From: Heteronotia binoei
Taxonomy: Eukaryota
NCBI RefSeq assembly: GCF_032191835.1
Contig: NC_083237.1
Coordinates: 49,910,001-49,974,000 of the forward strand
Direction of reading: 5' to 3'
Length of the DNA: 64,000 bases
Part shown: positions 28,862-29,262 of the stretch, in pieces
Numbering within the stretch: position 1 is the first letter of the stretch
Layout: each line of letters begins with the position of its first letter
The notes under the pieces: generated by a model
Seen by the model: only the letters and a program-made list of their open reading frames with translations
The model's database searches: none
Told to the model about the DNA's origin: nothing
Translations under genes and position numbers: made by a program

Positions 28862-29262
28862 ATGGCCATGAGTTCCTTCTTGATCAACTCCAACTATGTG
28901 GATCCCAAATTCCCACCATGCGAAGAATATTCGCAGCACGATTACCTTCCCAGTCATTCTCCGGAATATTTCAGCGGCCAGAGGCGAGAGGAGAACTCTT
29001 TCCAACCCGAGGCGTTGTACCCAGCGCGGTCCGCCTGTAACCAACCAACCTATCCTTCGTGTCGGGGCTCCGGCCACCAGCCGGCGGTCCTCTCTCCCAG
29101 GAGCCAGCAGGTCCACGCTCCGGCGGGACTTCAGAACCACCTCTCCGACCATCACGCCAAGCCCACCGCCTTCCTGTAGCCAAAACTCTCTCAACCAAAG
29201 CCCTTCCTCTTGCAAAGAACCGGTAGTTTATCCTTGGATGAAGAAGGTGCACGTTAGCACGG
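28862..29262 (+). CDS. HOXB4: HOXB4 exon 1, with a frameshift at about 29150 in this sequence
   Basis: MAMSSFLINSNYVDPKFPPCEEYS...GLQNHLSD is in one frame, which stops at 29177-29179; ITPSPPPSCSQNSLNQSPSSCKEPVVYPWMKKVHVST is in another; donor GTAAGT at 29263. Confidence 0.9.

What the first reader, a model, noticed from the sequence alone, without database searches (positions are those of the whole stretch)
29140..29179. Frameshift in HOXB4 exon 1
Seen: the N-terminal frame (ATG 28862) runs to ...GLQNHLSD, continues as HHAKPTAFL and stops at 29177-29179 (105 aa, no YPWM, no homeodomain). The conserved TPSPPPSC...YPWM segment is in a different frame starting at 29151, and the junction is GAC-C-ATC. 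Against chicken HOXB4 as I recall it (LSEPNHPCEPGTPSPPP), about 7 codons are reduced to 1 nt, a ~20-nt deletion. Inference: either an assembly or haplotype artefact in a draft genome (quite likely) or a real loss-of-function or rewired HOXB4 allele, which would be remarkable for an amniote Hox gene.
Basis: partly seen in the sequence, partly recalled or inferred. Interest (0 to 1): 0.75.

Follow-up and report, generated by a model that had tools for sequence, protein, structure and literature searches.

The report
Private 20-base gap breaks gecko HOXB4
This gecko assembly's HOXB4 gene lacks 20 bases that every other gecko checked has, which breaks the reading frame; the rest of the gene is perfectly conserved, so this is a very recent lesion of this one assembly or animal (sequencing error or rare null allele), not an evolutionary loss of a Hox gene.

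Summary
Exon 1 of HOXB4 (ATG 28862) changes frame at 29148/29149 and stops at 29177-29179. The YPWM motif is in the +1 frame, and the homeodomain exon (31260-31585) is intact.

Against Gekko japonicus, G. kuhli and Eublepharis DNA, the window lacks exactly 20 nt (ACCGAGCCACCCTTGCGAAT). It has no other indel in the exon. Contigs from four further gecko organisms all carry the 20 nt, but they are relatives. No reads of the window's own species were found, so the decisive test could not be run.

The gene shows no decay:
- It has 0 private substitutions in 401 exon-1 sites and 2 silent ones in 326 exon-2 sites.
- The flanking non-coding DNA has 6-9%.
- The lesion is therefore younger than about one sixth of this lineage's private branch.

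If real, it is a null allele. The premature stop lies 83 nt before the exon junction, and I found no credible rescue by splicing or an alternative AUG.

My odds:
- Assembly or consensus error: 0.55.
- Real young null allele in the sequenced animal: 0.37.
- Fixed loss or rewiring: about 0.05.

Interest is low. The scan's other notes on this genome (unchecked) report frame breaks in other essential genes.

The parts
28862..29262 (+). HOXB4 exon 1 coding part (ATG 28862 to donor G|GTAAGT), broken by the frameshift
   Evidence: It is 96-99% identical to exon 1 of Gekko japonicus, G. kuhli and Eublepharis. It has 0 window-private substitutions in 401 aligned sites.
29148..29149 (+). Deletion junction: 20 nt (ACCGAGCCACCCTTGCGAAT in Gekko) are missing between these two bases
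   Evidence: Alignment A1. Contigs of four other gecko organisms show these same 20 letters 'put in behind 29148'. There is no homopolymer, tandem repeat or junction microhomology (read).
29177..29179 (+). Premature TAG stop of the N-terminal frame, 83 nt upstream of the exon 1/exon 2 junction
29151..29262 (+). Conserved ITPSPPPSC...KEPVVYPWMKKVHVST segment, now in the +1 frame (YPWM at 29229-29240)
   Evidence: It is identical in protein to Gekko and Eublepharis HOXB4 except for the last residue, T versus S.
28896..28898 (+). First AUG of the +1 frame, the proposed rescue start of note s1-330284. It lies inside the conserved codons TAT GTG.
   Evidence: The surrounding sequence is identical in all four geckos, so this AUG is incidental and not new.
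29263..31259 (+). HOXB4 intron (phase 1), with an N run at 29459-29684 that was left untouched
   Evidence: Donor and acceptor (tttcactcag|TC) were read. N runs are listed.
31260..31585 (+). HOXB4 exon 2 coding part with an intact homeodomain (about 31289-31459) and stop at 31583-31585
   Evidence: Pfam PF00046, E 4.1e-24. The protein differs from the Gekko species by 2 and 4 residues. It has 2 window-private substitutions in 326 sites, both silent.

Best explanation
This is the orthologous, syntenic HOXB4 gene of a gekkonid lizard, lying downstream of intact HOXB6 and HOXB5. In every respect but one it is a normal gene under strong constraint. The 20-nt gap at 29148/29149 is most likely a defect of this assembly's consensus, such as a local mis-call or a polishing or haplotype-merging error, and not a property of the animal's or the species' gene. 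On this reading the real gene carries about 20 more bases there, encodes ...LSEP(S/N)HPCESITPSPPP..., and makes a 248-aa protein as in Gekko and Eublepharis. Shown here: the gap, its exact size, its absence from all relatives, and the lack of any decay. Inferred: that the gap arose in silico and not in the germ line.
For: 1. The 20 nt are present in three other gecko assemblies and in contigs of four more gecko organisms. The eight residues they encode are present in all squamate, tuatara, turtle and bird HOXB4 proteins read.
2. There is no sign of relaxed constraint. Window-private substitutions number 0/401 in exon 1 and 2/326 (silent) in exon 2, against 6.1% upstream and 8.9% in the intron. 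Splice sites, YPWM and homeodomain are intact.
3. No second indel compensates for the shift.
4. Base rate: unchecked notes of this scan report frame breaks in other essential genes of the same assembly, namely the Hoxc9 homeobox, UBE2C exon 4 and a periaxin exon. That is far more than real null alleles would give.
5. A null allele of a deeply conserved Hox gene is rare a priori.
Against: The lesion does not look like the usual long-read error. It is a single clean 20-nt deletion in complex, non-homopolymer sequence. The local consensus is otherwise flawless, with no other private indel between 28548 and 29458 and none in HOXB5 or HOXB6. Private indels in the flanks are no more frequent than in the other three geckos. 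An isolated clean deletion is exactly what a real germ-line allele looks like. No reads of the source animal were available, so the artefact is inferred and not shown. The other frame-break notes are unverified.
Confidence: 0.55

Rival explanations
1. The deletion is a real, very young null allele. The sequenced animal carries it on the assembled haplotype, most likely heterozygous, as a rare segregating variant. The transcript would have a premature stop 83 nt before the last exon junction. It would therefore be expected to undergo nonsense-mediated decay or give a 105-aa product without YPWM or homeodomain. The other allele and the HOX4 paralogues would cover the function.
For: The lesion is isolated, clean, not in a homopolymer, and lies in an otherwise error-free stretch. 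That is typical of germ-line deletions and of assemblers that pick one haplotype at a heterozygous bubble. The absence of decay fits an allele younger than about one sixth of the private branch. Hoxb4 mutant mice show sternum and ventral body wall defects as homozygotes (review PMC11809137). From my own knowledge, heterozygotes are essentially normal, so a carrier is plausible.
Against: The prior is low for any one animal to carry a null allele of this particular gene. A deletion of 10 nt or more is only a small part of the null-mutation spectrum. The same assembly is reported (unchecked) to break other essential genes. No independent sample shows the deletion.
Confidence: 0.37
2. This is a species- or lineage-wide loss of canonical HOXB4: a fixed pseudogene, or a gene rewired to start at the frame-B AUG 28896 and still make a YPWM-plus-homeodomain protein.
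For: The lesion is in the reference sequence and nothing from the same species contradicts it. Frame B is open from 28896 to the donor site. The first AUG has a weak -3 position, so some leaky scanning is conceivable.
Against: The N-terminal 96 codons would be useless under either version. Yet they show 0 private changes in a lineage with 6-9% private change in neutral DNA. An old loss would predict roughly 45-65 changes in the 727 coding sites, and 2 are seen. The frame-B AUG lies inside conserved codons and is identical in geckos with an intact gene, so it is not an adaptation. Two frame-A AUGs precede it. All seven other gekkotan sources are intact.
Confidence: 0.05
3. The frame is restored on the RNA or at the ribosome, by a cryptic intron inside exon 1 or by programmed +1 frameshifting.
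For: Twenty-two GT..AG pairs in exon 1 would restore the frame on paper.
Against: None has a donor close to MAG|GTRAGT. Most would also delete large conserved parts. All of these letters are the same in geckos with an intact gene. No known shift-prone site lies between the start of the open frame B and the stop. A shift at the stop itself would replace the conserved ITPSPPPS by HHAKPTAFL.
Confidence: 0.02

Closest known systems
Frame-breaking consensus errors in long-read reference assemblies (the cases that annotation pipelines flag as 'LOW QUALITY PROTEIN' and correct)
   Same: A single indel breaks an otherwise perfectly conserved essential gene. It is private to one assembly, and relatives and paralogues are intact. 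A gecko example of such a flag, Hox-C4 of Euleptes europaea, turned up.
   Different: Typical errors are 1-2 nt in homopolymers and often cluster. This one is an isolated 20-nt deletion in complex sequence. I could not see how the public annotation treats this gene.
Engineered Hoxb4 null alleles of the mouse
   Same: If real, the allele would remove the hexapeptide and homeodomain, as the mouse nulls do. Those cause split sternum and ventral body wall defects in homozygotes (PMC11809137).
   Different: The mouse alleles are engineered and their phenotype is known. Nothing is known here about zygosity, frequency or phenotype.
Natural Hox gene losses in squamates (for example Hoxb13, said to be a pseudogene in Anolis; PMC3394116)
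   Same: A Hox gene of a lizard with a disrupted reading frame.
   Different: Those are old losses of posterior genes with decay. Here an anterior gene shows one lesion and no decay at all. No paper in the held library links Hoxb4, squamates and pseudogenes beyond passing mentions.

Membership tests
HOXB4 orthologue (paralogue group 4, B cluster) | Homeodomain of the Antp/HOX4 type in exon 2 | tested here: met
   Pfam PF00046, E 4.1e-24. Exon 2 is 84-90% identical to squamate HOXB4 proteins and differs from the Gekko species by 2 and 4 residues.
HOXB4 orthologue (paralogue group 4, B cluster) | Conserved N-terminal motif MAMSSFLINSNYVDPKFPPCEEY and hexapeptide YPWM in one reading frame | tested here: not met
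   Both motifs are present and unchanged, but they lie in different frames because of the 20-nt gap.
HOXB4 orthologue (paralogue group 4, B cluster) | Position in the cluster, same strand, downstream of HOXB5 | tested here: met
   HOXB6 exon 2 (about 2130-2388) and HOXB5 (about 5577-7904) lie upstream on the + strand with intact frames. HOXB3 was not seen within the window.
HOXB4 orthologue (paralogue group 4, B cluster) | Two-exon structure with a phase-1 intron after ...VHVST | tested here: met
   The donor is G|GTAAGT at 29262/29263 and the acceptor is cag|TC at 31259/31260. This is the same arrangement as in the gecko loci L001-L003.
Unitary (decayed) pseudogene | Several independent lesions and a substitution rate near the neutral rate | tested here: not met
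   There is one lesion only. Private substitutions are 0/401 and 2/326 in coding sites, against 6-9% in neutral flanks.
Unitary (decayed) pseudogene | Lesion shared by related species | tested here: not met
   The lesion is absent from three gecko assemblies and four further gecko organisms.
Processed pseudogene / retrocopy | No intron, and a location outside the cluster | tested here: not met
   The intron is present and the locus is syntenic.
Assembly consensus error | Reads of the source individual carry the missing bases | not testable with these tools
   No run of the window's own species was found. The best holders had 0.46-0.57 of the words and proved to be relatives.

The most novel reading that the evidence does not exclude
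The deletion is real and homozygous or fixed in this gecko. That would be a natural knockout of the canonical HOXB4 protein in an amniote, so recent that no decay is visible yet. It might be partly buffered by HOXA4/C4/D4 or by weak initiation at the frame-B AUG 28896.
Probability: 0.05. Interest if true: 0.75.

Novelty: not a real feature. Interest (0 to 1): 0.15.

Why it matters
If it were a real, fixed loss, it would be the first natural HOXB4 knockout in an amniote. It would bear on redundancy among group-4 Hox genes and on axial and sternal patterning. The evidence points the other way. The gene is fully constrained and the lesion is private and very young. The practical lesson is about data quality: anyone using this assembly for Hox gene content or gene-loss screens should treat this frameshift as unverified. 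Such screens should also ask for absence of decay and for read support before calling a loss.

Tried and rejected
1. Same-species reads. The four runs laid are relatives: all differ from the window at 28990, 29110 and 29259 and carry the 20 nt. The decisive test could therefore not be made.

2. Independent contigs with the truncated product. A word search with the 105-aa frame-A piece found nothing above 88% identity. So there is neither an independent copy of the deletion nor a same-species intact copy in that collection.

3. The public annotation of this gene. HOXB4 proteins of lizards sit in 90% clusters. 15 of the 22 members of the main cluster could be listed, and a second look-up returned the same 15.

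4. Unusual residues as decay. I first suspected GREPKRSR and [10 protein letters not shown] in exon 2 were signs of decay. I rejected this because both are shared with Gekko japonicus and G. kuhli.

5. A noisy assembly patch. I rejected this locally. Private indels are no more frequent than in the other geckos, and none lies within 600 nt of the lesion.

6. Cryptic splicing, +1 recoding and rescue by an alternative AUG. I rejected these as unlikely (and reading).

7. Literature. I found no paper on a gecko HOXB4 frameshift and none describing how the Heteronotia binoei assembly was made.

Not done, by rule:
- The joined exon 1 + exon 2 model was never built for or sent to a search tool; the pieces were searched apart.
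- One local script translated hypothetical internal splices of exon 1 only.
- The N runs were not filled or looked up.

Full report
**What is there**

The + strand of the window carries, in order:
- HOXB6 exon 2 (about 2130-2388).
- HOXB5 (exon 1 about 5577-6237, exon 2 about 7650-7904). Both have open frames.
- A two-exon HOXB4 gene.

HOXB4 exon 1 starts at ATG 28862. In that frame it reads MAMSSFLINSNYVDPKF...GLQNHLSD, then HHAKPTAFL, and stops at TAG 29177-29179, giving 105 aa. The +1 frame reads ITPSPPPSCSQNSLNQSPSSCKEPVVYPWMKKVHVST from 29151 up to a consensus donor, G|GTAAGT, so the exon ends at 29262. Exon 2 begins after tttcactcag at 31260. It encodes an intact homeodomain (Pfam PF00046, E 4.1e-24) and ends at 31585.

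**What the lesion is**

A word search with the exon 2 reading frame returned squamate HOXB4 proteins. Their clusters hold three gecko proteins of 248 aa: Eublepharis macularius, Gekko kuhli and G. japonicus.
- All squamates, the tuatara, a turtle and a bird have eight residues between ...GLQNHLS and (I/V/G)TPSPPPSC. These read EPSHPCES in Gekko and EPNHPCES in Eublepharis.
- I fetched the three gecko loci and aligned exon 1 as DNA.
- The window lacks exactly 20 consecutive bases, ACCGAGCCACCCTTGCGAAT in Gekko, between 29148 and 29149.
- There is no other gap in the exon, so nothing compensates for the shift.
- The missing stretch is not a homopolymer or a tandem repeat, and the junction shows no microhomology. 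The nearest direct repeat (CGAA...CGAA) would have given an in-frame 18-nt loss, which is not what is seen.

**Reads**

I laid the best run of each of four organisms (all are Logan contigs).
- Every one carries the 20 letters 'put in behind 29148'.
- Every one also differs from the window at 28990, 29110 and 29259, and at 0 to 3 further sites.
- At 28990 and 29259 the window agrees with Eublepharis, while the four organisms agree with the two Gekko genomes. They are therefore relatives on the Gekko side, not the window's species.

Seven other gekkotan sources have the intact frame. A word search with the truncated 105-aa piece found nothing above 88% identity. The protein collection therefore holds no second copy of the deletion either.

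**Which genome**

Earlier notes of this scan call it a gecko. One follow-up on the same chromosome names Bynoe's gecko, Heteronotia binoei. Its RefSeq assembly GCF_032191835.1 has 21 chromosomes and belongs to the family Gekkonidae. I did not verify the name. My own data fit a gekkonid outside the Gekko clade:
- Non-coding identity is 87-90% to the two Gekko genomes and 79-81% to Eublepharis.
- The window shares with Gekko the otherwise unseen residues GREPKRSR and [10 protein letters not shown].

**Age of the lesion**

I counted sites where the window differs while the three other geckos agree:

| Region | Window-private substitutions |
|---|---|
| Upstream DNA | 71 of 1156 (6.1%) |
| Intron | 78 of 872 (8.9%) |
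| Exon 1 coding sites | 0 of 401 |
| Exon 2 coding sites | 2 of 326 |

Both exon 2 changes are silent, because the protein there equals that of Gekko. One more exon 1 difference, 29110 (H to Q), is not counted because the outgroup differs too.
- Neutral evolution of the 727 coding sites over the whole private branch would give roughly 45-65 changes.
- With 2-3 changes seen, the 95% Poisson upper limit is about 6-8.
- The gene can therefore have been free of constraint for at most about one sixth of that branch.

An old or lineage-wide pseudogene is excluded. What remains is an artefact or a very recent allele.

**Consequence if real**

The stop at 29177-29179 lies 83 nt upstream of the only exon junction. 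By the usual 50-55-nt rule, this predicts nonsense-mediated decay. Any product would lack the hexapeptide and the homeodomain. I checked three possible rescue routes.
- *Alternative AUG.* The frame-B AUG at 28896 (note s1-330284) sits inside the conserved codons TAT GTG. It is identical in geckos with an intact gene, follows two frame-A AUGs, and would put 85 out-of-frame residues in front of the conserved part.
- *Cryptic splicing.* Of 22 GT..AG pairs inside exon 1 that would restore the frame on paper, none has a donor near the consensus. All are unchanged in the relatives.
- *Recoding.* I see no site for +1 recoding.

A real allele would be a null.

**Artefact or allele**

Evidence for an allele:
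- The lesion is isolated and clean, and it lies in complex sequence.
- Between 28548 and 29458 it is the only private indel.
- Private indels in about 5.4 kb of flanks are no more frequent than in the other three geckos.
- HOXB5 and HOXB6 are unbroken.
- The locus is therefore not a noisy patch, and 20-nt deletions are not the usual long-read error.

Evidence for an artefact:
- It is rare for one haplotype to carry a null allele of this particular gene, and rarer still for that allele to be a deletion of 10 nt or more. My rough estimate, from general population-genetic reasoning and not computed here, is a few in 100,000.
- This scan's unchecked notes list frame breaks in other essential genes of the same assembly: the Hoxc9 homeobox, UBE2C exon 4 and a periaxin exon.
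- If those notes hold, frame-breaking errors touch something like one gene in a hundred or two here. Even a small share of larger deletions among them would outweigh real alleles.

| Reading | Odds |
|---|---|
| Artefact | 0.55 |
| Real young allele | 0.37 |
| Fixed loss or rewiring | 0.05 |
| RNA-level or ribosomal rescue | 0.02 |

The first two cannot be separated without reads of the source animal.

**Comparison with what is known**

The closest known thing is the ordinary frame-breaking consensus error that annotation pipelines flag and correct. A gecko example, 'LOW QUALITY PROTEIN' Hox-C4 of Euleptes, appeared. If real, the lesion would resemble the engineered mouse Hoxb4 nulls, which give split sternum and body-wall defects in homozygotes (PMC11809137). 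Known squamate Hox losses are old and concern posterior genes, for example Hoxb13 in Anolis as stated in PMC3394116. I found no paper on a gecko HOXB4 frameshift.

**Limits**

- No same-species reads were available.
- The sequencing technology of the assembly is not known to me from any tool.
- Seven members of the main HOXB4 protein cluster could not be listed. I therefore could not see whether the public annotation already flags this gene.
- By rule, the joined exon 1 + exon 2 model was not built for any search, the pieces on either side of the stop were searched apart, and the N runs were left alone.

**Verdict**

The frameshift is a private, very young lesion of this assembly or animal, and interest is low.

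Noticed in passing
window 31275-31335 (exon 2, start of the homeodomain): The window and both Gekko species read GREPKRSR and [10 protein letters not shown]. Eublepharis and all other squamates, the tuatara, the turtle and the bird read GGEPKRSR and QQVLELEKEF. This is a gekkonid-specific pair of changes at otherwise invariant HOX4 positions, just before and inside helix 1 of the homeodomain.
   Followed up: partly
window 11890-49524 (eleven N runs): Eleven N runs of 129-255 nt, all of different lengths, lie across the HOXB6-HOXB4 region and beyond. One (29459-29684) is in the HOXB4 intron, right after a stretch that is highly conserved among geckos. The odd lengths look more like deliberate masks than assembly gaps. 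They were left untouched.
   Followed up: no
window 1-8000: HOXB6 (end of exon 1 with YPWM at 45, exon 2 about 2130-2388) and HOXB5 (about 5577-6237 and 7650-7904) are intact. HOXB5 carries a long alanine run and a G/S/N-rich insert in exon 1.
   Followed up: partly
window 62876 region, - strand: A short tandem repeat reads as ...[19 protein letters not shown] in one frame. It is a chance hexapeptide-like match in a 12-nt microsatellite, not a gene.
   Followed up: no
L002 (Gekko kuhli CM122952.1): The G. kuhli HOXB4 protein record is labelled 'UNVERIFIED_CONTAM' by its source. Yet it sits in a 62-Mb chromosome record and is a normal gecko HOXB4. The label looks like an over-cautious contamination flag.
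   Followed up: no
window 29323, run X1 (organism A): The contig of organism A has three extra A after 29323 in the intron's A run. It also keeps G at 28984 like the window, while sharing 28990 A and 29259 T with Gekko. It seems to branch between the window's species and the Gekko clade.
   Followed up: no
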